From: Octopus sinensis
Lineage: Eukaryota
Length of the DNA: 64,000 nucleotides
Direction: 5' to 3'
Assembly (NCBI RefSeq): GCF_006345805.1
Contig: NC_043010.1
Coordinates: forward strand, 65,162,001-65,226,000
A program made the translations under genes and the position numbers. The notes below the pieces were generated by a model, which made no database searches, was not told the origin of the DNA, and saw nothing but the letters and a program-made list of their open reading frames with translations. Position 1 is the first letter of the stretch; each line of letters starts with the position of its first letter. Shown here in pieces: positions 9,446 to 56,015 of the stretch.

Positions 9446-9495
<50 letters not shown>

Positions 9496-9509
<14 letters not shown>

Positions 9510-10003: not shown

Positions 10004-10049
<46 letters not shown>

Positions 10050-11310: not shown

Positions 11311-12159
11311 TGCTTTCACAAACAAACTTTCTTATCTATATATTAAACACGTGAGACCGAAAATGCCACAGAAGACCAACACCTCGGATAAAAATACAAA
11401 TGAGGACATACTCAAAGAACTGAAAAGTATTAATACACAGCTCATTACCCCGAACAACAAAATCGAGGAATCAAACCTACTCTCCCGGGAAAGTAAAAGC
11501 AATGAAGATACAACTCGCTACACTGACCAGGTTAGTAAGGATTTGCAACTGTTATACACAACACTAAATTCAATTTTCATCAACAAATCCGAAAATAATA
11601 AACACACACCAAATGAAACACAGCAGGACATCATACGCACCCAAATTAACCCAGCAAAAAGAAAAATAGGAAACATTTGGAATACAAACCTGCACAACAG
11701 AAAACTCGCCTTCTGGAACATGATAACAAATTCCAACAAAGCAGATATATACGAGGGATGGATGAACTCAACACCAATTATCCTCCCACGCAAATTCCAG
11801 AAAAAATTAATTCCTAACGAGCCTGACGGACAGAGAACTATTAGGGAAAAGTCAGCTCTGTTCAATTTAAGATCAGAAATAGAGCTTCTAAGACTAAGGG
11901 CCTCCACAAATGAGGAAACATTTAAAAGCATTGACGAGGAGATGCACAATATAATACAGAAACATACCGAGGGACAACCCCTCTAAAATACATTAGATCA
12001 TTAGAAGGATACCTGTGAAAAAGAAGAGAGAAATTCTCTCCTGCGCTGGGAGAAAAACATGGATTTCTTCCAAAAATATAGTTCAACTTTCAAAAATGAA
12101 TTGGGTACAAATAATCCTTCCTTAAGAAAATTACAAAACATAAAAAAGAAAACCAAACA

Positions 12160-15043
12160 ACAGGAAAGGAAAGAAAGGAGTCATGGAGGTGTTGCTATGT
12201 ACATCCGGGAGGACGTCACACCCCAGGTCCTCTTGTCATACTCAAACTCGGTGTGTGACACACTAATTGTACATATTAGGCAACTTGATGTAGTTGTGTG
12301 TGCTACATATCGCCCTCCAGATGCCCCAAGCCATGAGGGCAAGTTTGAAGACTGCCTTATAAAAATAGAAGAAATTCTAACCACATTAGAACAACACATA
12401 GGTGTGCTTCTTATGGGAGACTTCAATCTGGCCAATGTCAGATGGCCCGAGGGCCTTTCTCTCCAGGAATGACAAGATGTGAACGAGGACAGGCGAGGTC
12501 CCTCCTGAACCTCATCAACACCCTGTACATGGAGCAGGTAATACTCCAACCAACCAGGGCAGGTAACACACTGGATTTCTGCTTCACAAATGACATGGAT
12601 CTCATCCATAATGTGAAAGTGACACCGACACTACTCTCGGATCACAACATGATAGAGCTGACCATGTACGGGCCAAAAGAGAGCACGGACATGCAGCCTA
12701 CAAGAAACCCTCAAAATCTTTCCAGCTTGAACTACCATAAAGCAAACTGGAAACAAATTGAGAAAGAGATCCTCAAACAAAACTGGCCTAAATGTCTCTC
12801 CTCGCCAGACATCGACGTGAAACTTCAACAATTCATGTCTGTAATGCAAGCCATATGCTACAAATGTGTCCCAGAGAGAAAGGCCACTGTACACAAGAAC
12901 AAAATCCCCAGAGAGAGGAAAATTTTAATGAGACGGCGTACGAAATTTTCAAATCGCCTAAACAAACAGATTGAAAGCAGTGAAAAGTCCCGCCTAAAAA
13001 TAAAACTGTTGGAAATCGAAAAATGTCTGCAACTCTCCCATGAAAAAGAAAGAGCAGACAAAGAAGCCTGGGCTATAGAAAACATAAAATCTAACCCCAG
13101 AGCTTTCTACAGGTATGCCAAAGAAACAGCTACAGTGCACTGTAGAATAGGGCCACTCCTCGAAAAGGATGGCACACTTACAGGAAAACCAATGAGGGTA
13201 AGTGAAATACTGAATGAGCAATTCAAGAGTGTTTTCACTCCACCCCTTGGGCATCTCCAAATCACCAATCCAACTGACTTTTTTACCACTGCAGATATAA
13301 AATCAGAGGCGGCGACGATAGATTACATCGATATAAAGGAAGACGATGTAACCAAGGCTATAGATGAAATGAAAACAGACTCAGCTACTGGCCCCGATGG
13401 ATTCCCGGCAATCCTCCTAAAAGCATGTAAGAGAGCCCTAGCAAGACCACTGCAGTTCCTCTTTCAGAGCTTCCTTGCAGCTGGCAAACTTCCAGGAAAA
13501 CTGAAGGAAGCTAAAATATGCCCCATTCATAAAGGAGGTAGCAGAGCGGAAGCCAAGAACTATAGACCTATCTCTCTGACCTCACACATCAGCAAGGTCA
13601 TGGAACGAATAGTCAGAAGGAAGCTGATCACCTTCCTTGAAGAGAATGACTTGCTACCCGACACCCAACATGGTTTCCGACCAGGGAGAAGCTGTTTAAC
13701 TCAGCTCCTACAACACTATGACTGGGTGCTGAAACGGCTGCTCAACCGCTCAAATGTGGAAGTGATATATCTCGACTTTGCAAAGGCCTTTGATAAAGTC
13801 GATCATGGAATGATATGTCACAAACTGCGTGATCTCAACATAGTTGGAAAACTGGGAGAATGGCTTCATGACTTTCTGAAGGATAGAAGTCAGGTGGTAG
13901 TAGCCAATGGGGCCACCTCCATTAACACACAAATAGTGAACGGTGTTCCGCAGGGCACTGTTCTGGGACCACTACTGTTCATAATGGCCCTCTCAGACAT
14001 GCCCTCAGCCACGCAGAGAGCCACGATCACAAGTTATGCAGATGATACAAAAGTTTCACAGGCAATACAGAACCCTGAGGACACTAAACACCTGCAATGT
14101 GAGCTGGACGAAATATACAAGTGGGCTGAAAAGAATAGCATGCAGTTCAATGCTGGAAAGTTTCAAGCTTTATACTATCAGTATGCAAAACTGAATGCAA
14201 TACCCAATGAATACACTGGACCCGGAGGGATTGCAATCCCAGAGGCACAATCAGTGCGTGACCTGGGTATTCACATGAGTGATGACGCGACCTTTCATGT
14301 ACATGTTGCTAAACTGACAATGAAATGTAGACGGCTGGCTGGATGGATTCTTAGAACCTTTAGAACAAGAGAACAAGAAACCATGATGGTCCTCTGGAAG
14401 ACACTTGTCCTAAGCCACTTTGACTATTGCTCTCAGCTATGGTCACCATCCAGTGTCAAGTTGATCACAGAACTTGAGGCGATCCAACGAAGCTACACGA
14501 AGAAGATAGCCTCTATGCAGAATGTAAGCTACTGGGAAAGACTCAAGAGTTTAAAATTATATTCCCTGGAGCGTAGGCGGGAAAGATATGCCATAATATA
14601 CATCTGGAAGATCCTGGAGGGAAGTGTCCTGAACTTTGGCATCGAGAGTTACGCAAATGCCAGAACTGGGCGCCACTGCGTGGTGCCTAGGACTCCAAAC
14701 CTGCCATCAAGATGTAGGACAAGATTCTGTGATAGCCTGGGCTTCCGAGGCCCACAGCTCTTCAATATCCTCCCGAAGAACCTGAGAAACCTGCATGGGG
14801 TGGATACAGATGTCTTTAAAATGAAGCTGGATCTCTTCCTGTCAGGTGTCCCAGATGAACCAACTTCACGGCAGGAGGGGCAGATGAGGGCAGCTGCATC
14901 GAACTCTCTCATGCACCAAATAGCAGTTGCTAGAAAGCCTCCATGAAGTGAAACCAAGTAGCAACACCAAATGGCGGTGCCCCAGCATGGCCACAGCTCA
15001 TAAGCTGAAACTAGAATCAATCAATCAATCAATCAATCAATCA
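12160..15043 (+). mobile_element. CR1/L2-group LINE, 5'-truncated within the APE endonuclease, (ATCA)n tail, nested in Penelope
   Basis: APE motifs GGVAMY, YRPP, MGDFN and SDH; RT motifs LDFAKAFDKVDH, GVPQGTVLGPLLF and YADD; tail (atca)n at ~15016-15043. Confidence 0.93.
12442..14946 (+). CDS. LINE ORF2 (APE C-terminal part plus RT, 834 aa); one frameshift relative to 12059-12472
   Basis: Uninterrupted 834-codon frame with an intact YADD motif. Confidence 0.85.
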   Translation: MARGPFSPGMTRCERGQARSLLNLINTLYMEQVILQPTRAGNTLDFCFTNDMDLIHNVKVTPTLLSDHNMIELTMYGPKESTDMQPTRNPQNLSSLNYHKANWKQIEKEILKQNWPKCLSSPDIDVKLQQFMSVMQAICYKCVPERKATVHKNKIPRERKILMRRRTKFSNRLNKQIESSEKSRLKIKLLEIEKCLQLSHEKERADKEAWAIENIKSNPRAFYRYAKETATVHCRIGPLLEKDGTLTGKPMRVSEILNEQFKSVFTPPLGHLQITNPTDFFTTADIKSEAATIDYIDIKEDDVTKAIDEMKTDSATGPDGFPAILLKACKRALARPLQFLFQSFLAAGKLPGKLKEAKICPIHKGGSRAEAKNYRPISLTSHISKVMERIVRRKLITFLEENDLLPDTQHGFRPGRSCLTQLLQHYDWVLKRLLNRSNVEVIYLDFAKAFDKVDHGMICHKLRDLNIVGKLGEWLHDFLKDRSQVVVANGATSINTQIVNGVPQGTVLGPLLFIMALSDMPSATQRATITSYADDTKVSQAIQNPEDTKHLQCELDEIYKWAEKNSMQFNAGKFQALYYQYAKLNAIPNEYTGPGGIAIPEAQSVRDLGIHMSDDATFHVHVAKLTMKCRRLAGWILRTFRTREQETMMVLWKTLVLSHFDYCSQLWSPSSVKLITELEAIQRSYTKKIASMQNVSYWERLKSLKLYSLERRRERYAIIYIWKILEGSVLNFGIESYANARTGRHCVVPRTPNLPSRCRTRFCDSLGFRGPQLFNILPKNLRNLHGVDTDVFKMKLDLFLSGVPDEPTSRQEGQMRAAASNSLMHQIAVARKPP

Positions 15044-24174: not shown

Positions 24175-25315
24175 CCGGTCATTTCCGCTCCACCGGTCAC
24201 TCCTTGCAACACCTATCTGTGTTCGGTTTGTCCTTACACAGAGGCCATCCGGATTCCCGTTTGCGCCGTGAACAGGAATTAATCTTCTCTCTTCGCTCTT
24301 ATACGCCATTTGGTCTCAACTCTCCCCCCCTCCTCATCTAACCCCACTCTCCCCCCTCCTCACCTATCCTTTCTCCCCCCGACCCCTACTTCTTCAGTCC
24401 TTCATCCTTTCACCCCTACTCCCCTTCCCTTCTTCCCTCTTTCTCCCTCCCTCTTCCCCTTCCCTCTGCTCCCTCACTCCCTCTCTCCCCTTCTCTCTCC
24501 CCCTCTCCCTCTTTCCTCCTTCATCCCCCTCCTCCCTTTCCTTCTCCCCATCCTCTCCTCATCCCCCTTTCTCCTCCCCCTCCTCTTCCCCTCCCCCTCT
24601 TCTCCCCCTCCCCCTCTTCTCCTCACTACACCACATGACTTTACACATCACATCACATATGATGTGCCATACTAATACACACACCAACTAATACATACTA
24701 ATACGTACTAATACATACTAGTACATACTAATACTTACACCAACCCTATACATACACACGTCCAGACCCCGCATACGCACTTATACTCTCACACACACAC
24801 ACACACACACCTATACATACCAATACGTACTAATACATACTAATACATACTAATACATACACCAACCCCATACATACGCACGTCCAGACCAATCCTACGC
24901 ACTAATACTCTCTCATACACACACACACACACACACACACCCTTATACATACTAATACATACACCAACCCTATACATACACACATCCAGACCCCTCCCAC
25001 GCACATTTAGCTGGTCCCTCAACCCTTTTATCAACCCTATTATCTCCCCTTATTTCGCTCTCGCGTCTCATGTTTGATCTTTGACCTCTGGCCGAAATCA
25101 GATCGCCATGTTGATTCGTTAGCTACTGCACGCATTTTGTTTCTCTCCTTCTTTCTGTGTTTTTCTCTCTCTGTGTATCTTTCTGTTGAAGAGCGTAGGC
25201 TCGAAACGTTAAAGACTTGTTTTATTTATATTTCCTGAGCGCCATACTAATACAATTGTTCGTTTGTTTTCCACCTGCCTTCGTCTTTTGTTTATTTTCA
25301 TAAAGCTTCCCGTTA
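24175..25315 (+). mobile_element. 5'-truncated Penelope-like element: GIY-YIG C-terminus, low-complexity 3' UTR and pLTR
   Basis: GHFRSTGHSLQHLSVFGL...RREQELIFSLRSYTPFGLNS; CT-rich tract at 24330-24630; flanked by a ~27-bp direct repeat (24134-24160 / 25379-25405); absent from the paralog at ~56000. Confidence 0.85.
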
Positions 25316-25447
25316 TATATACATATATATGTATATATACATATATATATATGTATATAAATATATATATATATATATAACATCAAATTCTCATACATAC
25401 ATATACATATATATATATACATAAAGATATATATATATATAATATAT

Positions 25448-25500
<53 letters not shown>

Positions 25501-25503
<3 letters not shown>

Positions 25504-25707
25504 GTATGATCAATGAGTATCCGGACTGTTGTCATAGTGACGAAGCTAAAGCACGCAGAGTGAAGCCGCTGCGCATGCGCTCTAAGATTTAATATTGTAG
25601 CTCACTTCCCTTCTTTGCAGCAGTGCTTGGAAGGAGAAAATTGAGCAGAGAATCTGGGCTAAAGTTTGTGAAAAGCTTAGCGATACCTGCTAAGAGGGTT
25701 ACGCAAA
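25501..25707. mobile_element. End of a mariner deletion derivative cut by the gap (paralog at 56865-57110)
   Basis: gtggtatgatcaatgagtatccggact...gagggttacgca matches 56866-57108. Confidence 0.8.
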
Positions 25708-25807
25708 NNNNNNNNNNNNNNNNNNNNNNNNNNNNNNNNNNNNNNNNNNNNNNNNNNNNNNNNNNNNNNNNNNNNNNNNNNNNNNNNNNNNNNNNNNNNN
25801 NNNNNNN
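25708..25807. other. Assembly gap (100 N)
   Basis: A run of exactly 100 N, typical of a placeholder of unknown size. Confidence 1.
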
Positions 25808-26060: not shown

Positions 26061-26596
26061 TTAAAGGCGGGAACTGTTTCAGCACACTTTGTGTATCGAA
26101 ATGACAATAAAATTGGAGATTATGAATACAAAGTAGGTCACATGATGTGTAATGAAAGATTTCCAGACAAAGGACATATAATAAGAACAATAAGAAATCT
26201 GAGGTGAAGAACTTGTATACAGTGCGTGTGTTTATTTGGCAAGAAAAACACTCACCATCCCAAAATATAACAATATTTTACAAATATTTTTAGGTAGTAT
26301 TTATAAACATTTTCTGGTGTATCGTTTACCTAAAAAGATTACAAACTTCTCTCTAAATAATACATCATTTCTTATGATTTTCTGCTTGGTTTGTGGAGAG
26401 TTACACCATACCAAAAGAACTTCGATAACAAAAACCATAGTACCAACTTTAATGAGCTGCCCCATCATTTATATGATATAGGCCTTTCGAGTGATAATTT
26501 CTCAATCCTGATGCTTCTAACTATACATACTATCATATAATATTTAACTCATATCACTATTAATATTTCTATCCTTTTTTTCGTTTTTCTACATAG

Positions 26597-26728
26597 GCAG
26601 CACCTATTTACTTGCCTAGGACATTAAATGAAACTGTTAAAATTGGGCCATATCTCCTGGAACTAATAAATGTTGAAGGCAAAGACGTTTGCATACACAG
26701 TGTTTTGAAGGTTGAATGTGATAACAAT
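26597..26728 (+). CDS. Receptor-type PTP D2-like domain, exon a (132 nt, phase 0-0): AAPIYLPRTLNETVKIGPYLLELINVEGKDVCIHSVLKVECDNN
   Basis: Acceptor tttttctacatag|, donor |gtaagc. The peptide matches the PTP Y(W)P...GP(F/Y)xxEL region and is in frame with the next three exons. Confidence 0.82.
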
Positions 26729-27099
26729 GTAAGCTAATTTCATGTTTAAAATTATTCCACTTTTGAAAATGATATTATAGCTTAATGAAAGCTATACCTT
26801 ATATTCCTGCATTGTAATATATATTTTTATATTTTGTTGGTTCATAATAACAACGTAATTAAGGATACTTGTTTTAGTAAGATGACAAAATCTCCCAGTA
26901 AGTGACCGTTAACTCTGACTTGTGAATGCAGCTATCCAGCCCCTGAGAAAGGATACGAAACCAGATGCTTTGAGAATAGACAGACGCCAAGTACGGATGG
27001 TCAACACTATCGAAAACATTCAATTGATCTATGCTGATTAGAGACCCATAGTGCCATGCTCAGTGACAACTCTCTCTCTCTCTTCTCTCTTCTCTCTCT

Positions 27100-27480
27100 C
27101 TCTCTCTCTCCATGATGTATCAGATGAGGTGGAAGTTGTCGTGGATTGCTCTGCATGGGGTAGCACATGTCTGCATCTTACCAGTCCCTTCATCAACGAC
27201 AACCCCCCACTTCTTTGCCAAAATCCTCAGTTTTTAGCAGAGGCATGGTCCCCTTGTTTGGAATTATTTGGGCAGTGCTACCACTCTTTGACTTCGAGGA
27301 TTGTAGTTTCTGCCCTACAGACCCCTAAAACGGTTTTTGCTCGTTCGTGTCTTACAGCACGTACCTTGGTTCTGATGATGCAACCTTCGTGATTCGCGTT
27401 TAGGAGTTGGTCTAAGACCAATCTCGTTGCAAAGCACTTCAGTCGCAAAGTCATTCCAATATTTCTCTTGTAGATTTTTA
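27100..27480 (-). mobile_element. Possible decayed L1/Tx1-type LINE fragment
   Basis: The - strand reads RLVLDQLLNANHEGCIIRTKVRAV, resembling the Tx1/L1 post-endonuclease region. Recognition only. Confidence 0.35.
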
Positions 27481-27989
27481 ATTGTCCTTCTAATCTAATT
27501 GTATCTATCACCACATCCATACTACACCTTATCAATTCTATTCTAACCCATTGTTCAAGGTTTGAAAAAAATCATTCATTTTTTTTTATATGTTGAAATG
27601 TCCATATGTCGGAGAAGAAATATTTATGTTCAAGTAACGTTTTGCTTATTTGGCAATTGCCGAATCATTTCGGGAGTTGTTTTGAGGAGATGAGTCTTCC
27701 CCGTTTTTTTTTTTGTTGTTATTTTGTCACCCTGTTAACAGATCGACTCAAAGCATTCTAAACAGCTGTCTATTTACACCAAAGAGCAAAAACAAGCAAC
27801 AAATACCTTTGTTTAGAAATCCTACTCACATAACCGAAGGCACGTTCCCACACTTAAGTAATCTAACACATTTAGTAATCTAGCAACTGTGGAGTCGAAA
27901 TAAATATTTTACAAGACAATAGAAATACTGATCCTTTCTAACCTAGAAACAAAATATGAAATTTCAGGAGATAGGGCTAGTCGATCGCA

Positions 27990-28354
27990 TAAACCCCCGT
28001 CGCTCAACAAACACTTAATCCAGAAAGGATGAAAGGGAAATTCGAACACGACAGATTTTGAACGCAGAACGTAAAAACGGACGAAATTCCGCAAGGCATT
28101 GTGTCCAGCGCCCTGACAAGTCTGACGGCTCGCCGCCTTAGTAAGGATTTCAGAGTTTTGACACAAGGCCAGCAATTTCGAGGGATGGGATAAGTCGATT
28201 ACATCTATCCCAGTGTCTAACTGACACTTATTTTATCTAGCCCGAAAGGATGGGAGGAAACGTCGATCTCGACGGAATTTGAAGTCAGAACGTCCAGACG
28301 GACGAAACACTGCTAATTTTCCAGGCGCGGTAACAATTCTACCAGCTCGCCGCC

Positions 28355-28355
<1 letters not shown>
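27990..28355 (-). mobile_element. Two stacked tRNA-derived SINE remnants
   Basis: Two ...gctcgccgcctt 5' ends on - (at 28139 and 28356), with ggaatttgaa B-box complements. Confidence 0.7.
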
Positions 28356-28390
<35 letters not shown>

Positions 28391-28396
28391 TTAATA

Positions 28397-28830
28397 ATGG
28401 CCGGTTCCTCCATGAAACCAACAAATTTATAGACCAGGGAGCAGCATGGAGGTGGCTCAAAATGTGTGACCTAAAAAAGAATATTGAAAGTCTAATCCTC
28501 GCTGCTCAGGACCAGGCATTGAATACCAATTCAGTGAAAAAGAATATATACCACACAAGTCCATCGACCCTCTGTAGAAAGTGTGGGAAGAGGGTCGAAA
28601 GCGTGATTCAAATTTTTTGTGCTTGTGAAAGTCTTGCGCAGAAAGAATACAAGCGTAGGCACGATAAAGTAGCCCAAATTCGCCCTTGGCTACTATGCCG
28701 TAAGTATGGGTGCTTGGTATCACCATACACCGGAAAATATAATGGACGAAAAGGGAAAGGCAAAAGTCCTCTGATACTTGGATTTCCAGACGGTCAAGAT
28801 GTTAGAGCACCGAAGGCCGGTGCCTTTGGG
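28397..28830 (+). mobile_element. R4/Dong-clade non-LTR fragment (CCHC region) next to (TAA)n
   Basis: AWRWLK...ESLILAAQDQAL...CRKCGKRVESVIQIFCACESLAQKEYKRRHDKVA. Preceded by (TAA)n at 28356-28396 and followed by (TTA)n at 28914-28990. Confidence 0.85.
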
Positions 28831-28912
28831 AGAGACAAACTCTTTGTTTATCTGGAAATAAAAATCCCAAAGGAATTTTCCCTTCCCCTTATCACCCATT
28901 ACCTTTTCCGGT

Positions 28913-28978
<66 letters not shown>

Positions 28979-29324
28979 TATTATTATTAATAATAATAAT
29001 AATAATAATAATATATACAATAATTTTAAAGTTAAATGTATGTTATGTTACAGAATTTTCGCATTCATTAAACACTTAGGTAATCATAACATACTGTATG
29101 TTATGATTACAGGTACCTATAAATGGTTTGTCACTTGTCTTTTGCTGCCCAACTTTGGCATGTAACTTACTGCGATCAAATCCATCCCATCTAGTAACTT
29201 TCAGTCACTCGGTAGTACTCGCTCGTGTCTGTGACTAGACTTTTATGAGAAATCCTTAAAAGCCAAAGAATTTCTTTCAATTTTTATTCATATTTTATTC
29301 ACAATATTTTTTTTGATATTGCAG

Positions 29325-29476
29325 TCGAGGATCGAAGAATTTGAGATCAATCATTTCCAAGTCGCCATATGGGCGGACGGAAATTATCCATCATCTGCAG
29401 AGATTTTAAAACTAAGTGATATTCTCAGCGCTCATCAAAATGAGCAGTTCAATAAAAAAATTGCTGTGTATTGTCG
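29325..29476 (+). CDS. Receptor-type PTP D2-like domain, exon b (152 nt, phase 0-2): SRIEEFEINHFQVAIWADGNYPSSAEILKLSDILSAHQNEQFNKKIAVYC(R)
   Basis: Acceptor ttttgatattgcag|, donor |gtaagt. HFQ-x3-W(A)D loop and AVYC P-loop entry, with a phase-2 intron directly after the Cys as in receptor PTP genes. Confidence 0.9.
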
Positions 29477-30884
29477 GTAAGTGAAAATATTGATAAATTC
29501 ACAAATTCCCGCTACATCCGTTGTGATCCCATTCGAAAACAATATTTCTTTTTAACTAAGTCTTCTATGTTTTTAAATAAGTTTCCCTCTGATCCCGTTT
29601 TCTTTATTGCTATCACTTTACTAAACCTTATCGATCGTTATTTAATCACCTTTTGGGATGGCGAATCCCCACCTGTTATTGACGATTGCCCTAGCGAACA
29701 TCTGCGTAACTAATAAACTAATACAGTTTGTGTGAAATCGAGTGTCGGAAAGAAACGTCCAGCTTCCAGTAACCGCATCCCTGCCTACAAAGCCTATCTT
29801 TGTCGACCGTACAGATTACAGAGTTGTGGATTTCGCAGCCAACAATTTTAAATTGAAGATAAATTATGCTTTATCTGCTGGCCTAGAGAACGCTCTATCT
29901 AAATACGATCTGAATGATCCAACGCTGTTTGTCCATGTCTACAATGGTGGATCCAGAAAATCCATGAAGTATTTTTCAGACCGTTGGAAATATCGAGCAG
30001 ATTGCGAAGATTTTTCACCCTGCCCATATCAGCTTGTCTCACAAATCAAAACGTACATTCAAGATGATGATACAGTAGCTTTCTAATACTAAAGAATACG
30101 ACGGTTCCAAGGAAACCTGACACTTGAAGAATTCTGGTTATCCATCGCTGCAGGAGCATAAACAACTACTTGTCTGAATCCCCCTCCCCCAGAATCACCA
30201 ACGTACTTTCTAGGTCAATTAAAAGAGTAGTTATAGTGAGATCTAGACACTTCCGAAACTCCAAAACACTACGCCTCCCAATCACGTTAGACTTTGGGAT
30301 TTGCACACCTTATATGAATCGAAAATGTGCATAAAATCTTAAGGCTCGAAAATTCTGCTCTCACTGATGGATTTTGCATCTATATCTAGTGACTTTAAGC
30401 CATGTACATTTTTACTGCCTAATCTGGATGGCTGTAAGTGCTTCCACGAGAATTTCTGTCCCTGATGTCCATTACTTCTTTGCGGTATGTGCTTTTAAAG
30501 ATATCGTGTGTGTTTTGTGATATTTGAGTAATATTTTGTGTAATAGCTTTTATGTATAAATGTAATGTAGTTATTGTGTGTGATACTTCTATGATAACCT
30601 ATGTTTCCTTCTAGTTGAGTGCTAGAGTCTTTCAAAACCACACACTTCACTGCCCACCAGAAGTTTTGGTTTTGTAGCATGTTCCAGGCTAACACTGAAG
30701 TCCCTCTTCATCCCCCGCAAATCAGTATCAATGCAAAATCATGTAGATTACACGGCGAGTCAGTAAGTACAGAGAGGCGAGACTGGGCATCATTGATGGA
30801 CCAAACGAGCGAAGCTAAACTATTTTGATAGGTGGTCATTTACTTTAGCCACCGAACAGATATTCAGCCTCTGAAAACAGTATT

Positions 30885-30927
<43 letters not shown>

Positions 30928-30940
30928 TAATAATAATAAT

Positions 30941-32460
30941 AAAACAGACCTATAAATACCTAGGAATAAAAGGAGGCTCTGATATCCAGCATACAACCAT
31001 GAAAAAGAAAGTTAGGAAGGAATGTTATAGAAGAGTTCGAGCAGTCCTGAAGTCTGAGCTAAATGCATATAAAAAGGTGTTAGCCATAAATTCCTTAGGA
31101 GTCCCAGTTGTTCTTTATAGCTTCAATGTGCTTAACTGGAATACCAGTGAAATAATGAAAATTGATAGAAAAATCTGCAAGCCACTGAGTTGTAATAACA
31201 TGTACCATCCAAAGGCAGACGTGGGTCGTTTTTACCTTCCCGGAGCTCAGGGACGTCAAGGCTTGATCCAGCTTGAACTTACGTACAAAACCACCACAAT
31301 CAGACAGGCCAAATACCTTGAAACAGCCAAAGATTGGATGCTAAAACTTGTTGAAAAACATGAAAGACCGAAAAAACTTCACTCTATTCTGAAAGAGAGC
31401 GAAACATTCGCTACTGATCTCTTAGATACATACCAGATTGATCAGGTTGAAGGAAATGCGCCAACTACTGCTGCAAAGAAAAGAAAATTGATTGCAAAGA
31501 CAAAAGCACATGAAAAATTAGCTAGCATATGGGAACAGAAACCTCCGCATGGCAAGTATGTGGCCCGTAGCAAACAAGCCGATGTCGACCAGAAGCATAC
31601 GCATCAATGGTTACGAAGCTCAGGACTAAAAGCAGAGTGTGAAGGTTTCATATTAGCTGCTCAAGACCAAAGCTTATTAACCCAGAACTATAAAGCCAAT
31701 GTGATAAAAAATGGAGCTGACCCAAAATGCCGATTCTGTAACGATGAGATTGAAACAATAGACCATCCAATCTCAGGGTGTAGAGTCTTAGCACCTGAAG
31801 AATATAAAGCAAAACATGACTGAGTCGGCCAGTATTTACATTGGACAATATGACGGTATTATAAAATCAAAACCGCTGACAAATGGTATAAACACCATCC
31901 TGAAGCTGTGACTGTGGGAGAAAATGTGTCGATTCTAGGGGACTTCCCCGTACAGACCGACAATACTATAAAAGCTAATAAACCGGATATTATTATAAAA
32001 GATCAGATAAAAAAGATATGTTTATTAATTGACATGAGTATCCCTTGCGATCACAATATAGCGGCGAAAGAATTTGACAAGATTAGTAAATATAAACACC
32101 TGCTAATAGAAATTGAAAAAGTGTGGCATCTCAAGGGGACTACAGTACCAGTGATTGTAGGATCTCTAGGAATGATAAAAAAGGTACTGAAACCTATTTG
32201 AAAATGATTCCAGGCTTACCATCCCTACAGGAAGAGCAAAAAATCGTGTTAACTGGAACGGCTCATGTACTGAGAAGAGCATTATCGCTGTGAAAACAAC
32301 ATCCATTCATGAATTTATTTGTTTATTAATTTTTAAAAATATATATTTTACCTGTGAATTTACGATGTAATCTGGGAATGCATACAATGAGCTTCTCTGC
32401 CCTAGGTATACGGAAAACAACCGGCTAGGAATGGAAGAAAATTTGAAGAAAGAAGAAAAA
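30941..32460 (+). mobile_element. 5'-truncated R4/Dong-clade non-LTR retrotransposon inside (TAA)n, in a PTP intron
   Basis: YKYLGI, YHPKADVGRFYLP, FILAAQDQSL, CCHC CRFCNDEIETIDHPISGC and restriction-like endonuclease KPDIIIKD...LIDMSIP. (TAA)n on both sides (30886-30940 and 32461-32680). Confidence 0.92.
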
Positions 32461-32477
32461 TAATAATAATAATAATG

Positions 32478-32515
<38 letters not shown>

Positions 32516-32540
32516 GATAATGATAATGATGATGATGATG

Positions 32541-32582
<42 letters not shown>

Positions 32583-32619
32583 GTAATAATGATAATGATA
32601 ACGATAATAATATTAATAA

Positions 32620-32657
<38 letters not shown>

Positions 32658-32901
32658 TTAATAATAATAATAATTAATAATTTTTAAAAATAAGAAACAT
32701 CGTCCTATTTTTACTTATATACAGTATAGTAAAGTATGGTTTATTTTTTAATGGAACTTCTACATACAATTTCAAATATATATCTTTGTCTCTGTATGTT
32801 ACTGAGAAATTTTGTCCGAATCATGATTTTTTACAATGTTAGAATGTATTATTCACATGTTTTTAAACGTAAAACAATTCTCATCCTTCTTTCATGTAAA
32901 G

Positions 32902-33037
32902 TAAAAATTTCCATAAAAGTGGTATGCTGTGCGTCATTCACATTTTGAAAGCTGCAATAACCAGTCAATCAGTAGTCAACATAGTACGGTTGGTTCGACT
33001 GGTCAAGAAAATAGAACCAAATATAATACCTGACAGT
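32902..33037 (+). CDS. Receptor-type PTP D2-like domain, exon c (136 nt, phase 2-0): (R)KNFHKSGMLCVIHILKAAITSQSVVNIVRLVRLVKKIEPNIIPDS
   Basis: Acceptor ccttctttcatgtaaag| (AAG, weaker), donor |gtgagt. C-R-x5-SG-x2-C spacing equals the D2 C-x-DGATKSGLFC pattern, and the phase closes exon b's split codon. Confidence 0.87.
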
Positions 33038-33739
33038 GTGAGTATAACAACATCTTTCTCTCACTTTCGTTTATGTGTTTCAACCAAGTTTTGCTAAATA
33101 TCAGAAAGAGAAAAATCTGTCGTTAAAATTTTTACTGTTATTTGAACACTTTTCTGAAAATAAGTTTCAAGTTTGGTGATCATTGATACACTAATAACTA
33201 TTTGGATTAGTTATCTTACAACGGAAATGTACGAACAGTGGGTCGTATATATGTGGGTAAATTTGATTAGCAAACTCCAGAATCGAAAGAACTAAAACAT
33301 TTCCCTTGCTACCCTAGAAATTTTTAAACGTGTTATTTTGGACATGTTGCGAGTTTGAATTTCATTGTTAGTGATAGGTAAATATTTCTCTCAATTTAGA
33401 TAAACAAATTCAAAAGTACAGCAGGAGGCCACATCAATGAACTTTACATTTATTTATTAATATATCTTGTAGGGAACACTCAGTAACCAGTGGCTGGCTA
33501 TTGAGTTAAAAATGTTATATGTTACTGTACAAAATCAGTAAATCACCATTATTTTAATCTCGATATTATGAGAGGAAATTAATAGCCTTTGTAATGATTC
33601 ATGTCCGGGATCATCAAAATTATAGTTCACAATCACTTTATTTAGACCAATGTTATCTATTTAGACATACACCTCTGATATGTTCCATATTTAAGAAGTT
33701 AGTATATCTTCATGTAATCCTTTCTACTAAAGGTACAAG

Positions 33740-34152
33740 GGCTGAAAGATTGGGGGAAGGGACTAGTCGAATACATGTACTAATGTTTCACTGGTACCTA
33801 TTTTTATTGACCCCGAAAAGGTGAAAGGCAAAGTCTGCCTTGGCGGAATTTGAATTCAGAGCGTTCACACGGACGAAATACCGCTAAGCGTTTCGACCGA
33901 TTTTGACAGCTTGCCGCCTTAGCATATCTTCATATAATACTTTCTACTTAAGACACAAGGCCTGGAATTTGGGGGAGGAAGTTAGTAGATTACATTGACC
34001 CCAGTGCGTAACTGGTACTTAATTTATCGACCCCGAAAGGATGAAAGGCAAAGTTGACCTCGGCGGAAGTTGAGCTAATAATGTTCACACGGATGAAATA
34101 ACGCTAAGCATTTCGCCCGGCGCTCTAACGATTCTGCCAGCTCGCCGCCTTA
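33740..34152 (-). mobile_element. Two tandem tRNA-derived SINEs
   Basis: ggcggaatttgaattcag / ccccgaaaggatgaaaggcaaag cores; gccgcctta 5' ends at ~33920 and ~34152. Confidence 0.8.
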
Positions 34153-34336
34153 GTATATCTTCATATAATGAATACATCTGCGTAAATTAGTACCAAGAGC
34201 TTATTTCGAAAGTTGTTTTTATTAGATGTGGAAGGAATTTATAATGCTAAGTAAAGGATACAGTAAAATAAAATAATTGTGTATTAAGTCATTTTAAATG
34301 ATTTGATTGAATAACTCATATTTATTTCTTTGACAG

Positions 34337-34414
34337 GAATCCTACGCCTTCGTTTGGAAAGTTGCAGAATATTTACAGAACGAATCGTCTCTATACTCCA
34401 ATTTTGTACAGTGA
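34337..34414 (+). CDS. Receptor-type PTP terminal coding exon d: ESYAFVWKVAEYLQNESSLYSNFVQ*
   Basis: Acceptor tttatttctttgacag|; degenerate EQY.F helix; C-terminal YSNF; TGA at 34412-34414. Confidence 0.85.
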   Translation, partial: ESYAFVWKVAEYLQNESSLYSNFVQ

Positions 34415-36329
34415 TGTGTAGGAGTGAATCATTTTAGAGATCTCTCATAATAAGTTTTACATCTTATGAAATAAGAAATGATGTATGCAAAACAATTACT
34501 TGTTTGTTGGATAACGAAAACAAGAGCCTCGCGGGAATTCTTTGTTTCTCTCAAAGGAAAAGGAAAACCATTTCAAGAAGATAATAATTCGTCTCTCAAA
34601 ATTAATTTACATGCTACGAGGCAGGCGTCATCTTTGTTTACACATATAGGCCAACTATGAGCATTATTTGGTAATAATACCTTATGCTAATTACAGCCGC
34701 CAAAATTAATTCGGACCACTTTTTCTTCCCGAAATGTCAATGTTAATTCGTCAGGAACCCTTAGAAAGGATGCGCTAAATTTATGGTTTTCAACAAACGA
34801 AAATATGGCTCTCCTTGCCTATAAATAAATGGCTGAGGTTTTTCTTTCCTACACAAGTCAATTAACTATGAAATGTTAATATTGATATCTTAGAATTATT
34901 ACAGCTTTTTTTGAGACTATGCTACAATTAGCGATAAATTCATTTTTATTGTCTCCAACTAAGACTAATCACTATTTTTCTTACTATTGTGTGTATACAG
35001 CATTAAGTATATCGCCGGTTAACATAGTTATCTAAATTTATGTCATTTAATCTTTTGAGTCATTGCTCTTATTCACATTTTTCTTAATTATATATCTTAC
35101 AGTATTTTATGTGCTGATTTATTACAATCAGTCTCCTTTGCCCCTCTCTCCATTTTCAATATTTTGTCTATATATTTCTCACTTTTTTATCGTTTCTTAT
35201 ATTAAATCAACCCACTTGATATCCTACATTTTAATATTATATAACATTTGACATTCCTACAATTTCGAGAGGTAACGTTCAGCTACTTCGAAACAGCGAC
35301 AATGTTTTAATACAAACCAATTCACGTAGCACAGTTATCCTCTCAATTGATACACCACCGCTTCATTTACCATTTCTCCTGGCTCTATCCATACAAGGAT
35401 GGTAGCTTCTTTCATATAATGTTGCTGTCATTTCAGTTAATAGTATCCTTCACTTCAAAGATAACTGGAGTCTTCCTAATTCACATACTATGGTGCCATG
35501 ATTACTGAAATATCTCGCCTCTCATCTCAATAAGTATACAATTGTTGCCCTTTCTATCCATATACCCTTGATATCCATCGCATTTATACACAGTGTGTAT
35601 CCTCGCCGATCAGAATTATATCCCATGCGTTCTTCACAAGTCATATACTGACGCTTTCCTCTCAGATCATACACTTCAAATGTTTCTGTCTTTAGTGTTA
35701 ATGATCTCTCCATTCATCCATAACTCTTGCTTTCTCGATTCGTGGACATGCAGTTGGTGTCAATATCGTTGCTTAGATCAAGAAAATATTGATCAGTAAT
35801 ATTTTAATTTAGTCAACCACATTTTGCCTGGGGCTCAGCAAAAAAAAACCTCCTGTAATATAAGTATAAATAATCTAGTCTGAGATCAACAGCAGATGCT
35901 TATATATAAATATATATATATATGTATAAATCAATATAATCTTGTAATTTTTTGTGTAATCTGTATAAATGAAGTTATGATTATAAACTCTGGTCAGTCA
36001 TGCGAATTAATAAATTTATCTATATCTATAAACGTTGATGTTTGTCATTTTATCCTAAACACGTCCCTAAACACCAAAATTATCTCGAAATAATACATGG
36101 CTAAAACAGGGATTACTCGAGAAAACAGATGGCGAAAAACTGATAATTTTAATGAAATGGTAAGCTCTACACTTCTCTCTTTTTCACTCTATATTTTTCT
36201 CTCTTTCGCATACACAACAACCCCATACCGCCCCCATAAACGCGAACGCACATTTTACCATTCCTCTCTCTCACGCAACATTGTACAGTCTGAATATTTC
36301 ATTTTCAATTTTTTTTGTACAAGGGTAAC

Positions 36330-36930
36330 AATTTAGGTGGGTGGGGTGATCAATTACACCGATCTCAGTGCTCACTACTATTTATTTTATCAAATCCGAA
36401 ACGAAGAAGTGCAAGGTCACCATCGGCTGAATTTGAACTCAAAATGTAGGGAGTGAAAAGTAATCCTGCTATGCATTCTGTCACTGCTCTAAAAAACTGC
36501 TCGCTCGACGCTCCATTCACCACACTAATAATGGTTTCAAATTTCGGCACAAGGCCAGAAATTTAATTGGAAGGGCAAGTCTATTAAATATTTTATCGCC
36601 TCCGAAAGAATGAAAGGCATCGTTGACCTCGGCAGAATTTGAACTCAAAGCGTAAAGACGGAGGAAATCTGACGATTCTGCCAGATCCCCACCTTATTCA
36701 CCACCCTAATAATATTTTCTACTAAAAGCACAAGTCCTGAAACTTGGGGAGGGGACTAGTCGATTACATCGACCCCAATGTTTCACTGGCACTTAGTTTA
36801 TCGACCCCGAAAGGATGAAAGACATAATCGTCTTCGGCGGAATTTCACTTCAGAACGTAGCGATGGATGAAACACCGATAAACATTTCGTCCAGACTGGT
36901 AACAATTCTACCAGCTCGCTGCCTTATTCC
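36330..36930 (-). mobile_element. Cluster of tRNA-derived SINE remnants
   Basis: Repeated gaatttgaactc and cgaaaggatgaaag cores. Confidence 0.7.
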
Positions 36931-37699: not shown

Positions 37700-38560
37700 G
37701 TACATCGCACCCAGTACTGGACTGGCACACTAATTTTTCCACTCCGGAGCGAGGAAAGACTAAGTTGACCGCTAGCGGAATTTGGTCTCAGAGTATGAAC
37801 TCGGAAGAAAAGCTGCTTTCACAATATTGCCAGCGCGCCACGGTGATTATAATAATAATAATTTTTTATAATATAGGTACAAGGCATTAAGGCGGTGAGC
37901 TGGCAGAAACGTTAGCAGAAATGCTTTGCGGTATTTCGTCTGCCGCTACGTTCTTAGTTCCGCCGAGGTCGACATTGCCTTTCATCCTTTCGGGGTCAAT
38001 TAAATAAGTACCAGTTACGCACTAGGGTTGATATAATCGACTTAATCCGTTTGTCTGTCCTTGTTTGTGCCCTCTATGTTTAGTTCCTTGTGGGCAATAA
38101 AGAAAGAAGAAACGTTTGCACGCCGGTCGAAATGCTTTGCGGTATCTTCTCTGTCTTTAGTTCTGATTGCAAATTCCTCCGAGGTTGACTTTGCCTTTCA
38201 TCCTTTCAGGGTCAATAAATTAAGTAGCAGTTGCGTACTGGGAACGATCTAATCCACTGGATCCCTCCCCCTAAATTTCGGGCCTCCTACCTAGAGCAGA
38301 AAAGAATAATTAGCACGCCGGGAAAATGTGCCTTTCATTTTTGTGGGGTGGAGTCTATAAGATAAGTATCGGCCAAGAACTGAGGGGTCGATGTAATCAA
38401 CGTACCTCTCTCCAGAGATTGCTGGCCTTGTGTCAAAATTTGAAATCAATAAAGGTACAAGGTTTAAAATTTAGGGTAGGGAACGAGTCGATTACATCGA
38501 CCCAGACCTTCTATTGCCACATTATTTTGTCCACTTCGGAAAGACGAAAAGCAAAATTGA
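37700..38560. mobile_element. Cluster of tRNA-derived SINEs in both orientations
   Basis: aaggcggtgagctggcagaaacgttagc at 37889; ttcatcctttcggggtc cores. Confidence 0.75.
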
Positions 38561-41727: not shown

Positions 41728-44318
41728 TATATGTATGTATGTATGTATCTATGTATCTATGTATGTATGTATGTATGTATGTATCTATGTATGTATCTAC
41801 GTATGTTTGTCATTAATCAGTTTTATTTCAGGATTTCTTTCGAATAGAGAAACAATCGGATTCCAACCTTGATTCAGAGCTTCCTTGGAATTTCAATATC
41901 AACAAGGTTGTGTGTGTATGTATATGTGTGTATGTGTGTATGTATGTATGTATGTATGTATGTATGTGTGTGTGTATGTATGTATGTATGTGTGTGAGTG
42001 TGTGTGTGTGTGTGCATGTATCTGTATTGCTTTCTAACCTAGATCCAAGGAACCGTCACTGGAATTTTAACATTACCAACGGGTTTTTTGCATGTATGTA
42101 TGTATGTATGTATGTATGTATGTATGTATGTATGTATGTATGTATATGTGTGTGTGTGTGTGTATGTATGTATATATGTATATATTTATGTTTGCATGTA
42201 TGTTCGTATGTGTGTATACGCGCAGATTTGTATATTTGGTTTTATGTATGTATTCTCGTGCATATATTTGCATATCTAGACATGTTCATATATATTTAAA
42301 TGATAAACTCTTGGAAAGTTTTACAGATATTTAGAGTTCTAGTGACTGGTTGGATCTGTACTCTTCGAATTAGCCTTTTCGTTTCTGATATTGAGAAGCC
42401 TAGTTCCCCATGATTGGTCTTTAAGCAGGGTGTTACATATCCCGTGGTCCCAATAGTTACAGTCATAAACCTGAACAAGTAATCTGGATAAAGTAACTGC
42501 AGATTTCTCAATAAGTCAACATAGATATTCTCTTTTTCAGTGATCTTCAGCTTTATGCTAATATCTGCTGGGCAGCTAATTTCTACAACTTCTCAATCTC
42601 AAGTTATTATATCAGGCCTGAGATTTGCACTGGGCCATTCCACCAATGCTCCTTTTTATTATGAGTTGCTATGGCTTCTACCACACTGTGGGTTCTTATT
42701 TCTGTGTCCTCGTGGTTATTCTTCTAATGGATTTCATTATAGATTGTCCTCTCTACATCATGTCTCATCAGTAGATAATACTGTGATGACATTTTTGGAA
42801 AACTGCTTAAATTGTGGGTGATGTCTTCGGTGTTAAGTCCACAAAGTCTACATCGGTTGTCACATTTTATTGTCTTCCCTGCATCTGTATCCCTTTTGTG
42901 CATCAGGTATTTGGTTGATACCTTCTGTGCATCAAGCATTTGGCGTTTGCATGCATATATGTGTGTGTCTGCTGTCTGTCTGTATGTATGTATGTATACA
43001 TGACCTATCAAGAAAGGAATTCCAGTTATACCCATCCCGTATGTTCAGTAATCATAGGTTACAATAGATTAAATTTTCTGGTCTTCTTCCTACTTGTTAG
43101 AAAAAATAGATTCTCGTTTCAAGGAGAGCATGCAGCAATTTCTTGAAAAACATGCGATTGTGTAAAGTATCTCTCTTTGACTGGTATGTGAGAAACAGAG
43201 AGAGAGAGAGAGAGAGTTTGTGTGTGTGCGCCTGCGTGCGTGTATGTGCTGTGTGTGTGTGTGCTTGGTGATTGCACGAACAACAGTAAGAAGGGAGTGT
43301 TCTGAAAAGTAGACCAAAACATTCCGATTATTATCTACTAATATAAATGCAGGCTGCAGCGACGTATATCGGAAGCCATCAGAGTTACTACTATCTCCAT
43401 TTGACAATTGGTGAAGGGAGTGTCACACAATGTAACTTATATGGAAAGCACAATACTTTATAAACACATGGAGCGCTCACTTACTCAGATATTCAAGTCT
43501 AGTAGTATAATCTTTCAATAGTTTTACCACTATTATGTGCCTGCATAAGGGCGGCGAGCACACAAGGCAAAATGCTTAGCGGCATTTCCCCCGTCATTAC
43601 CATTCTAAGTTCAAATTCCGCCCAAAGTTGAGTTTGCGTTTATCTTTTCGTGGTCAATAAAACAAGTACCACTTGAGTATTGTGGTAGAAGTAATCGATT
43701 TAACCCTCCTCACCCGAACTTGGTGGCCTTGTGCCAAAGTTTGAAATAAATATTCTTTTACACTCTAGGCACAAGGACCGAAATTTGAGGTGATGAAGGC
43801 CAGTCGATTAGATTGACCCCAGTACGCAATAGGCACATAATTTATAGATCCCGAAAGGAGGAAAAGCAAAGTCAACCTGTGCGGAATTTGAACTCAGAAA
43901 GTAAAGACACGAAATACTGCTAAGCATTTCGCCCGGCGTGTAAGGGTTTCTGCCAGCCTACCGCCTTAGCTTCAAATAAATATCATTTCCAGTCTCATCA
44001 CTGATTGATCTGTTTAAATGTGTAGCCGTTCCAGTGTACAGCCAGTTTAGCGATTTAAAGGACACACGGCAACTGTTCAATTCACTTTCCATGTATAATG
44101 TATACGTACAAACGATCGAGCGCGTGTGTGTACATTATGTGTGTGTGTGTATATGTGTATGTGTACAACTTTAATATAGATAGATTGATTGATAGATTAA
44201 ACAGATAGTCTATCCATTACTGAGTCAGAATATACCTATCCTCAAAATGCGGTGCTTAACTTTGACTCGCTAAGTATTCGCTACTACCGTATCTATACAT
44301 GCACATATACATAAATAC

Positions 44319-48581: not shown

Positions 48582-56015
<7,434 letters not shown>

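What the first reader, a model, noticed from the sequence alone, without database searches (positions are those of the whole stretch)
26597..34414. Cryptic four-exon 3' end of a receptor tyrosine phosphatase gene, invisible in the ORF track
Seen: exons of 132, 152, 136 and 78 nt with AG/GT boundaries and matching phases (0,0,2,0) splice to a 498-nt frame (165 aa plus stop). Established: receptor PTP genes have a phase-2 intron just after the catalytic-site Cys followed by a 136-nt exon, and they end shortly after the EQY helix. No upstream exons were found in the window; the contig begins 790 bp before the first exon. Inference: the rest of the gene lies in or beyond the gap, or this is a partial duplicate in a PTP array.
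Basis: partly seen in the sequence, partly recalled or inferred. Interest (0 to 1): 0.7.

Follow-up and report, generated by a model that had tools for sequence, protein, structure and literature searches.

The report
Octopus receptor phosphatase gene tail
Four small exons in an octopus genome window are real and encode the tail of the second, catalytically dead phosphatase domain of a receptor tyrosine phosphatase gene whose front end is missing behind an assembly gap; this is an annotation gain, not a new kind of biology.

Summary
Exons 26597-26728, 29325-29476, 32902-33037 and 34337-34414 (+) have AG/GT borders and matching phases, and splice to 165 codons plus TGA. The peptide matches Pfam Y_phosphatase (E 1.8e-15, profile 86-232 of 234). 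Its AlphaFold model folds as a classical PTP domain. It is 85% identical to an Octopus bimaculoides protein and 70% identical to O. sinensis LOC115218885, whose gene has the same four exon borders.

One refinement: this is not the catalytic domain. It is the C-terminal ~60% of the membrane-distal D2 domain of a cephalopod two-domain receptor PTP. Cys94 is kept, but the P-loop Arg is Lys, two P-loop Gly residues are lost and both Q-loop Gln residues are lost. It is therefore most likely a pseudophosphatase docking or regulatory module.

dN/dS against the O. sinensis paralogue is 0.22, and the window copy shows no rate acceleration, so the exons look constrained. No other PTP exon exists anywhere in the 64 kb. 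The D2 first exon, linker, D1 and ectodomain must lie in or beyond the 100-N gap; alternatively this is an old partial duplicate. Repeat identities suggest the O. vulgaris/sinensis lineage. Verdict: an ordinary new member of a known family.

The parts
26597..26728 (+). Exon 1 of the four (132 nt, phase 0 to 0). It encodes AAPIYLPRT...KVECDNN, the 'YWP' region and central beta-strands of D2.
   Evidence: AG acceptor and GT donor. 63% identical to P0002 residues 52-92, with the same borders as O. sinensis L001 15824-15961.
29325..29476 (+). Exon 2 (152 nt, phase 0 to 2). It carries the WPD-loop equivalent IWADGNYP (29367-29381) and ends two bases after the Cys94 codon (29472-29474).
   Evidence: The paralogue exon L001 25866-26017 has the same 152 nt. 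tblastn E 7.6e-31 for self and 8e-19 to P0002.
32902..33037 (+). Exon 3 (136 nt, phase 2 to 0). It carries the rest of the degenerate P-loop, RKNFHKSG, with Lys100 (32915-32917) at the position of the catalytic Arg, followed by helices.
   Evidence: L001 has 136-nt exons at 28200-28335 (D2) and 3826-3961 (D1).
34337..34414 (+). Exon 4, coding part (75 nt + TGA). It carries ESYAFVWKVAEYLQNESSLYSNFVQ*, the degenerate Q-loop, the last helix and the natural C-terminus.
   Evidence: Homologues end at the same place (...LYSNFVQ*...LYSKY*...IYSNI*...YANFV*).
26729..29324 (+). Intron 1 (2596 nt). It contains a copy of a SINE-like repeat of about 220 bp and a TAT microsatellite.
29477..32901 (+). Intron 2 (3425 nt, phase 2). 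It contains a LINE fragment (ORF 30999-31823, zf-RVT).
33038..34336 (+). Intron 3 (1299 nt). It contains two tandem copies of the ~220-bp repeat (33699-34119).
26274..26596 (+). The 3' end of the upstream intron. It is still alignable (~67%) to the intron before the equivalent exon in the O. sinensis paralogue.
25708..25807 (.). Assembly gap of 100 N. The missing D2 first exon lies 3.5 kb upstream of the equivalent exon in the paralogue, so it would fall here or beyond.
34415..36179 (+). 3' flank, probably the 3' UTR and beyond. It is ~69-75% alignable to the 3' flank of the paralogue. The first AATAAA is at 34824.

Best explanation
The four exons are the last four coding exons of an unannotated paralogue of a cephalopod receptor-type protein tyrosine phosphatase gene. 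Its paralogues carry an EGF/discoidin ectodomain, a TM segment, an active D1 and a degenerate D2. The exons encode the C-terminal ~60% of the membrane-distal D2 domain (Pfam profile positions 86-232 of 234).

This D2 keeps the PTP fold and the nucleophile Cys94. It has Lys100 in place of the phosphate-binding Arg, Asn and His in place of two P-loop glycines, WAD in place of WPD, and neither Q-loop glutamine. It is therefore predicted to be catalytically dead. By inference it acts as vertebrate D2 pseudophosphatase domains do, as a docking or regulatory module next to D1. Vertebrate examples are substrate or partner recruitment as in PTPRK-Afadin and LAR-liprin-alpha, and stabilisation or regulation of D1.

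Shown here: the exons, the splice borders, the homology, the fold, the D2 identity, the residue states and the signature of purifying selection. Inferred: that the missing upstream exons (D2 first exon, linker, D1, TM, ectodomain) exist and lie in or beyond the 100-N gap, that the gene is expressed, and the D2 function.
For: - Exons and frame.
- Pfam Y_phosphatase: E 1.8e-15, 57.6 bits against a cut-off of 20.9.
- PDB sequence search: the best hits are D2 domains. RPTP alpha D2 scores 30.0 bits against 9.8 for its D1; RPTP gamma D2 scores 27.0 against 9.1.
- Library-wide profile search: the match lies at the C-terminal second domain of two-domain proteins (P0004 659-821 of 821; P0005 475-625 of 626, which has a TM helix and an active D1). 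The nearest relatives are all cephalopods.
- AlphaFold model: pLDDT 86.5. Foldseek finds classical PTP domains, with the best query TM-score (0.78) for RPTP epsilon D2.
- The same exon borders and sizes occur in O. sinensis, where active D1 exons (VVHC|SAGVGRTG) lie upstream on the same strand. A transcript contig from another cephalopod joins D1 and D2.
- Constraint: dN/dS 0.22 (dS 0.68) against the paralogue. Lineage-specific changes are equal, 10 in the window against 9 in O. bimaculoides over 139 sites. The ORF and all seven splice sites are intact.
- Residue states.
- D2 function in vertebrates: PMC9640194, PMC6994669, PMC2213029.
Against: - No upstream PTP exon was found in the 25.7 kb before the gap or anywhere else in the window. 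In O. sinensis the D1 WPD exon lies only 13 kb upstream of the equivalent exon.
- The protein database holds no annotated protein or transcript-derived protein for this copy, so there is no expression evidence.
- The likely O. bimaculoides orthologue is also modelled as a 167-aa protein that starts at this exon, with a divergent first 27 residues.
- Partial tandem duplication of D2-exon-bearing segments is seen at the O. sinensis paralogue locus.
- Loss of activity is predicted from residues and was not measured.
Confidence: 0.7

Rival explanations
1. Old partial duplicate. Only the 3' part of a receptor PTP gene (from about 320 bp upstream of exon 1 to about 1.8 kb past the stop) was copied here. 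It would now be either a recently silenced relic or exons recruited into some other transcript. No D1 or ectodomain belongs to it.
For: - Detectable homology to the paralogue starts at 26274 and ends at 36179.
- No upstream PTP exons occur in 25.7 kb.
- This copy is unannotated, and no transcript-derived protein is in the database.
- The O. bimaculoides relative is also a four-exon model.
- A partial duplication occurs at the O. sinensis paralogue locus.
Against: - dN/dS is 0.22, the ORF is intact and all splice sites are intact at dS 0.68 from the paralogue. There is no rate acceleration relative to the O. bimaculoides copy.
- 60% of a PTP domain is unlikely to fold on its own, so constraint implies the rest of the domain is present.
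- Exon 1 has no start codon and is closed upstream by TAG.
- Intron homology at ~67% is at the detection limit, so the apparent 'breakpoint' at 26274 may not be real.
- The gap sits just where the next exon is expected.
- Introns longer than 17 kb occur in the O. vulgaris paralogue.
Confidence: 0.22
2. The exons belong to a catalytically active PTP domain, either a single-domain PTP or a D1.
For: The nucleophile Cys94 and an Asp in the WPD-loop position are retained. Foldseek E-values do not separate D1 from D2.
Against: - Arg is replaced by Lys at C+6. Gly is replaced by Asn and His in the P-loop. Both Q-loop Gln residues are lost.
- Sequence scores are three times higher to D2 than to D1 of the same crystallised proteins.
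- All close relatives carry this sequence type as their second domain.
Confidence: 0.04
3. A chance arrangement of short ORFs with AG/GT borders, or exons derived from a transposable element.
For: The window is rich in repeats, including LINEs and SINE-like copies inside the introns.
Against: E 1e-75 to an octopus PTP protein, Pfam far above its cut-off, exon borders conserved in another species, and a confident PTP fold.
Confidence: 0.01

Closest known systems
Octopus bimaculoides 'Tyrosine-protein phosphatase domain-containing protein' (P0001, UniRef, 167 aa)
   Same: 85% identical over the last three and a half exons. Same C-terminus (LYSNFVQ) and same VYC.KNFHKSG P-loop with the Cys retained. 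It is the sister of the window copy in a three-way comparison and is probably the orthologue.
   Different: Its first 27 residues after 'AA' are almost unrelated although of equal length, and its model starts with Met-Pro. Its DNA could not be fetched, so I could not tell whether this reflects a model error or real divergence.
Octopus sinensis LOC115218885 (P0002, 216 aa) with XP_036365301.1 (P0009); O. vulgaris CAI9733297.1 (P0003)
   Same: 70% identical. The four terminal exon borders and phases are identical. Introns and the 3' flank are still ~67-79% alignable. An active D1 lies upstream on the same strand.
   Different: This is a paralogue, not the same gene. Its D2 has lost the Cys (AIHSSDKFHKSG) and has a 2-codon insertion in exon 1. 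Its upstream exons are present in the assembly, whereas here they are missing.
D2 domains of vertebrate type R4 receptor PTPs (RPTP alpha / epsilon; PDB 6uzt, 1p15, 6d3f)
   Same: RPTP alpha D2 is the best solved-structure sequence match and RPTP epsilon D2 gives the best structural TM-score. Both vertebrate domains are C-terminal second domains, and RPTP alpha D2 ends in Y-A-N-F.
   Different: Only ~16-25% identity. The aligned RPTP alpha D2 keeps the canonical C(X)5R P-loop (VHCSAGAGRTG), which the octopus D2 lacks. The cephalopod D2 clade also lacks the N-terminal motifs (NxxKNRY, DxxRVxL) in its full-length members.
D2 pseudophosphatase domains of PTPRK/PTPRM/PTPRT/PTPRU and LAR-type receptor PTPs
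   Same: This is the functional analogy: an inactive or nearly inactive second PTP domain used for substrate or partner recruitment (PMC9640194, PMC6994669).
   Different: No binding partner is known for the octopus domain. The analogy is an inference, not a test.

Membership tests
Classical protein tyrosine phosphatase domain (Pfam PF00102 Y_phosphatase) | Profile match above the curated gathering score | tested here: met
   57.6 bits against a cut-off of 20.9, E 1.8e-15, profile positions 86-232 of 234.
Classical protein tyrosine phosphatase domain (Pfam PF00102 Y_phosphatase) | PTP fold (central beta-sheet, P-loop between a strand and a helix, C-terminal helices) | tested here: met
   AlphaFold2 pLDDT 86.5 and pTM 0.75. 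493 PDB hits at E<=0.001; all 50 top-ranked hits shown are classical PTP domains, with query TM-scores 0.63-0.78.
Classical protein tyrosine phosphatase domain (Pfam PF00102 Y_phosphatase) | Complete domain, including the N-terminal third (profile positions 1-85) | tested here: not met
   Not encoded anywhere in the window. In the paralogue the next exon lies 3.5 kb upstream of the equivalent exon, which here falls in the gap.
Catalytically active PTP | Signature HC(X)5R with P-loop glycines (VHCSAGxGRTG) | tested here: not met
   The sequence is VYCRKNFHKSG. Cys94 is present, Arg is replaced by Lys100, and Gly is replaced by Asn97 and His99.
Catalytically active PTP | WPD-loop general acid | tested here: inconclusive
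   The sequence is W60-A61-D62-G-N-Y-P. The Asp is kept, Pro is replaced by Ala, and the loop Gly is shifted.
Catalytically active PTP | Q-loop glutamines (QTxxQYxF) | tested here: not met
   The sequence is P138-D-S-E-S142-Y-A-F. Both Gln residues are lost.
Membrane-distal D2 domain of two-domain receptor PTPs | More similar to D2 than to D1 of the same proteins | tested here: met
   RPTP alpha D2 30.0 bits against D1 9.8; RPTP gamma D2 27.0 against D1 9.1. The best stretch in nearly all of the top 150 library hits is the C-terminal domain.
Membrane-distal D2 domain of two-domain receptor PTPs | Lies at the protein C-terminus and ends a few residues after the last helix (Y-[AS]-N-F type end) | tested here: met
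   ...LYSNFVQ then TGA. Relatives end in the same way.
Membrane-distal D2 domain of two-domain receptor PTPs | Preceded by a D1 domain, a TM segment and an ectodomain in the same gene | not testable with these tools
   Absent from the window, and the gap is at 25708-25807. Present in paralogues: O. sinensis D1 exons and a 1575-aa EGF/discoidin model, and the P0005 TM plus D1.
Receptor PTP gene structure | Phase-2 intron one codon after the catalytic Cys, followed by a 136-nt exon | tested here: met
   In the window, TGT(Cys) CG|gt ... ag|T, with exon 3 = 136 nt. O. sinensis D1 (3826-3961) and D2 (28200-28335) are the same. Human PTPRQ exon 43 is 136 bp and begins at c.6603 (PMC12510351).

The most novel reading that the evidence does not exclude
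The four exons could be a stand-alone, conserved fragment gene. On this reading, an old partial duplicate carrying only the last ~60% of a D2 pseudophosphatase domain has been kept under purifying selection in at least two Octopus lineages (the window species and O. bimaculoides, whose model also starts at this exon). It would be expressed from its own or a captured 5' exon as a small non-catalytic protein.
Probability: 0.1. Interest if true: 0.45.

Novelty: new member of a known kind. Interest (0 to 1): 0.2.

Why it matters
The main value is for annotation. The protein database searched here holds no protein for this copy. The gene models of its relatives in all three Octopus assemblies examined are split or truncated: one O. 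sinensis gene is spread over three models. A correct model set would show how many discoidin/EGF receptor PTPs cephalopods have. It would also show how their second domain has decayed in different ways: Cys kept here and in cuttlefish, lost in two paralogues, and Arg replaced by Lys throughout the nearest cephalopod relatives. No new mechanism or long-standing question depends on this locus.

Tried and rejected
1. Upstream exons. I ran tblastn (word size 2, E 10), phmmer --max and phmmer with 158 receptor PTP proteins against all six-frame pieces. Nothing was found beyond the four exons.
2. A weak minus-strand hit at 55546-55650 ('GPSCE', E 0.1) lies inside a decayed reverse-transcriptase reading frame. 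I rejected it as chance.
3. Weak hits of the D1 active-site region at 42779-43000 and 8317-8547 are copies of one repeat with no PTP motif.
4. The ~540-bp segment at window 9470-10010 matches the intron just upstream of the paralogue's D2 first exon at up to ~99% identity. That looked like conserved synteny, but both flanks are unrelated, so it is a young interspersed repeat and there is no hidden exon next to it.
5. I asked whether the odd N-terminus of the O. bimaculoides protein is a frameshifted reading of exon 1. It is not.
6. Fetching the source record or the O. bimaculoides locus failed.
8. tRNA and Rfam scans of the window found nothing.
9. A literature search for an octopus PTP gene-family expansion found 0 papers.
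Full report
**Observation**

The window is AT-rich (about 37% G+C), repeat-laden eukaryotic DNA with a single run of 100 N at 25708-25807. The four claimed exons are exactly as described: 26597-26728 (132 nt), 29325-29476 (152 nt), 32902-33037 (136 nt) and 34337-34414 (78 nt). All have AG acceptors and all internal donors are GT. The phases run 0/0/2/0. The joined frame is 498 nt and encodes 165 residues plus TGA. A TAG that overlaps the acceptor closes the frame directly upstream of exon 1, so this exon can only be entered by splicing. The contig begins 789 bp before exon 1.

**Is it more than chance?**

Yes.
- The peptide matches Pfam PF00102 (Y_phosphatase) at 57.6 bits against a cut-off of 20.9 (E 1.8e-15), covering profile positions 86-232 of 234.
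- It is 85% identical to a 167-aa Octopus bimaculoides protein (P0001, E 1.5e-75) and 70% identical to O. sinensis LOC115218885 (P0002, E 9.7e-71).
- In the O. sinensis locus (L001) the homologous coding sequence is cut by introns at the same four places, giving exons of 138, 152, 136 and 78 nt.
- An AlphaFold2 model built on a 22-sequence alignment is confident (pLDDT 86.5). Foldseek finds classical PTP domains only. The best query TM-score (0.78) is to the D2 domain of RPTP epsilon. Target TM-scores are about 0.4-0.5, as expected for a fragment covering about 60% of a domain.

**Which PTP domain is it?**

- Against solved structures, the peptide scores three times higher to the second domain than to the first domain of the same proteins. 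RPTP alpha gives 30.0 against 9.8 bits, and RPTP gamma gives 27.0 against 9.1 bits.
- In a profile search of 1.84 billion representative proteins, the best stretch in almost all top hits is the C-terminal domain of two-domain proteins.
- The nearest long relatives are O. bimaculoides XP_014769029 (match 659-821 of 821) and a cuttlefish-type protein (P0005, 626 aa). P0005 has a signal-anchor/TM helix, an active D1 (VVHCSAGVGRTG, WPDHDVP) and a D2 with VHCQDNFSKSG. All the nearest hits are cephalopods, followed by a chiton.
- A Logan transcript contig from another cephalopod carries D1 and this type of D2 on one RNA.
- The peptide ends ...LYSNFVQ*, the same end as D2 of many invertebrate receptor PTPs (...YANFV...YSNFQ).

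The exons therefore encode the C-terminal part of a membrane-distal D2 domain and the natural C-terminus of the protein.

**Residue states**

- The P-loop reads V92-Y-C94-R-K-N-F-H-K100-S-G102, against the canonical VHCSAGxGRTG.
- The nucleophile Cys is kept. The Arg at C+6 is Lys, and the glycines at C+3 and C+5 are Asn and His.
- The WPD loop is W-A-D-G-N-Y-P, so the Asp is kept.
- The Q-loop QTxxQYxF is P-D-S-E-S-Y-A-F, so both Gln residues are lost.
- The nearest cephalopod D2 sequences share the KS[G/S] ending and the [LI]RL[VI]R..KK and SY..W.VA motifs. The Cys is lost in the O. sinensis paralogue (HSS) and in XP_014769029 (HGS).

From established PTP enzymology (my own knowledge, not tested here), loss of the P-loop Arg and of the Q-loop glutamines predicts no phosphatase activity. 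By analogy with vertebrate D2 pseudophosphatase domains, the likely role is docking or regulation beside D1 (PTPRK D2 recruits Afadin, PMC9640194; LAR-type D2 binds liprin-alpha, PMC6994669; CD45 D2 is catalytically impaired, PMC2213029). This last step is inference.

**Gene structure rule**

The intron after exon 2 splits the codon that follows Cys after its second base, and the next exon is 136 nt. The O. sinensis paralogue shows the same arrangement in its D2 (28200-28335). It also shows it in its active D1: VVHC AG|gt ... ag|T-GCT..., with the exon at 3826-3961 = 136 nt. A paper on human PTPRQ reports exon 43 as 136 bp starting at c.6603, a third codon position and hence a phase-2 intron (PMC12510351).

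**Constraint**

- Against the O. sinensis D2 coding sequence, dN = 0.15, dS = 0.68 and dN/dS = 0.22, with all four exons below 0.4.
- In a three-way protein comparison over 139 sites, the window copy has 10 unique changes, the O. bimaculoides protein has 9, and the O. sinensis paralogue has 28. The window copy and P0001 are therefore sisters and evolve at the same rate. Both are equally similar to outgroup D2 domains.
- Together with the open frame and seven intact splice sites, this argues for exons that are, or were until recently, under purifying selection.

**What is missing**

In O. sinensis one strand carries, in order:
- D1 exons (WPD exon, SAGVGRTG exon, Q-loop exon);
- a linker exon;
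- a D2 first exon (GPSCENEF...FFDPSG), 3.5 kb upstream of the equivalent of exon 1;
- the four terminal exons.

None of these upstream exons is present in the window. This holds by tblastn at E 10, by phmmer --max, and by phmmer with 158 receptor PTPs. Detectable nucleotide homology to the paralogue runs from 26274 (323 bp before exon 1) to 36179 (1.8 kb past the stop) at 67-79%. Upstream of 26274 nothing aligns, but intron identity is already at the limit of detection.

The gap sits 789 bp upstream of exon 1, so the next exon may simply be unassembled. The 25.7 kb before the gap contains LINE copies (1996-3231; 11.3-15 kb) and no PTP exon. Long introns occur in this family: in O. vulgaris no D1 exon is seen within the 17.5 kb of the locus upstream of the linker exon. 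I rate 'full gene, the rest in or beyond the gap' at about 0.7 and 'old partial duplicate' at about 0.2.

The points in favour of the partial duplicate are:
- the lack of any annotated or transcript-derived protein for this copy;
- the four-exon model in O. bimaculoides;
- the partial tandem duplication seen at the O. sinensis paralogue locus.

**Origin of the window**

Interspersed repeats in the window are 92-99% identical to copies in the O. sinensis and O. vulgaris loci (LINE 12164-15043 at 96%; the ~540-bp element at up to ~99%). They are at most 86% identical to copies in an O. bimaculoides locus. The sample is small, but it points to the O. vulgaris/sinensis lineage. On that reading the window gene is a paralogue of LOC115218885 and the likely orthologue of the O. 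bimaculoides protein.

**Comparison with the known, and verdict**

This is a member of the classical PTP superfamily, specifically a receptor-PTP D2 pseudophosphatase domain. Every membership feature testable in the window is met, except those that require the missing upstream sequence. The catalytic-signature features were tested and are not met, as is common for D2 domains. It is a new member of a known kind. Interest is low (0.2); the value is in annotation.

Noticed in passing
L005 1-23740 and L001 1-29098 (O. sinensis CM016872.1, about 64.67-64.73 Mb): One strand carries three gene models in a row. The first is a 1575-aa EGF/discoidin/PTP model that ends with D2 exons 100% identical to those of LOC115218885. 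The second is XP_036365301 (a D2-exon-2-like piece plus the C-terminal half of D1 plus the linker). The third is LOC115218885 (D2). This looks like one receptor PTP gene split into three models, with a tandem partial duplication that may be real or an assembly false duplication.
   Followed up: partly
L002 (O. vulgaris OX597827.1) against L001: The two sister-species assemblies are colinear at ~98.8% only from the linker exon onwards (L001 9033 / L002 17498). Upstream, the O. sinensis D1 exons have no counterpart within the 17.5 kb of O. vulgaris sequence held. This is either a structural difference or an assembly problem.
   Followed up: no
L004 (O. bimaculoides CM046614.1): A 691-aa F5_F8_type_C (discoidin) model lies directly upstream, on the same strand, of XP_014769029. 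The latter's D1 has lost the catalytic Cys (VVQSSNGVGRSG) and its D2 has too (HGS). This may be one gene encoding a receptor with two dead PTP domains.
   Followed up: no
window 9470-10010: An element of about 540 bp is flanked by (TA)n on both sides and ends in ...CTAG. Parts of it are up to ~99% identical (89% over the longest aligned block) to a copy just upstream of the D2 first exon in the O. sinensis and O. vulgaris paralogue. The flanks are unrelated, so it is a young interspersed repeat with TA-rich targets. Its type was not determined; a Helitron-like end is only a guess.
   Followed up: partly
window 7319-7720, 8687-9087, 28023-28371, 33699-34152, 36589-36926, 37887-38270, 43566-43968: At least seven copies, on both strands, of a SINE-like repeat of about 220 bp. 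Two of them are in tandem inside intron 3. The same repeat sits in the introns of the O. sinensis paralogue. No tRNA or Rfam match was found.
   Followed up: partly
window 1996-3231, 11351-15043, 30999-31823, about 55380-55700 (-): Non-LTR retrotransposon remains. They include an 834-aa ORF with endonuclease and RVT_1 domains (12442-14946; its copy is 96% identical to one in O. vulgaris), a 411-aa RT ORF, a zf-RVT fragment in intron 2, and a decayed RT on the minus strand.
   Followed up: partly
window 24310-25700: The contig end before the gap is low-complexity sequence: CT-rich tracts, ACAT-type 122-bp repeats and a long (TA)n, with GC skew -0.44. This is the kind of sequence at which assemblies break.
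   Followed up: no
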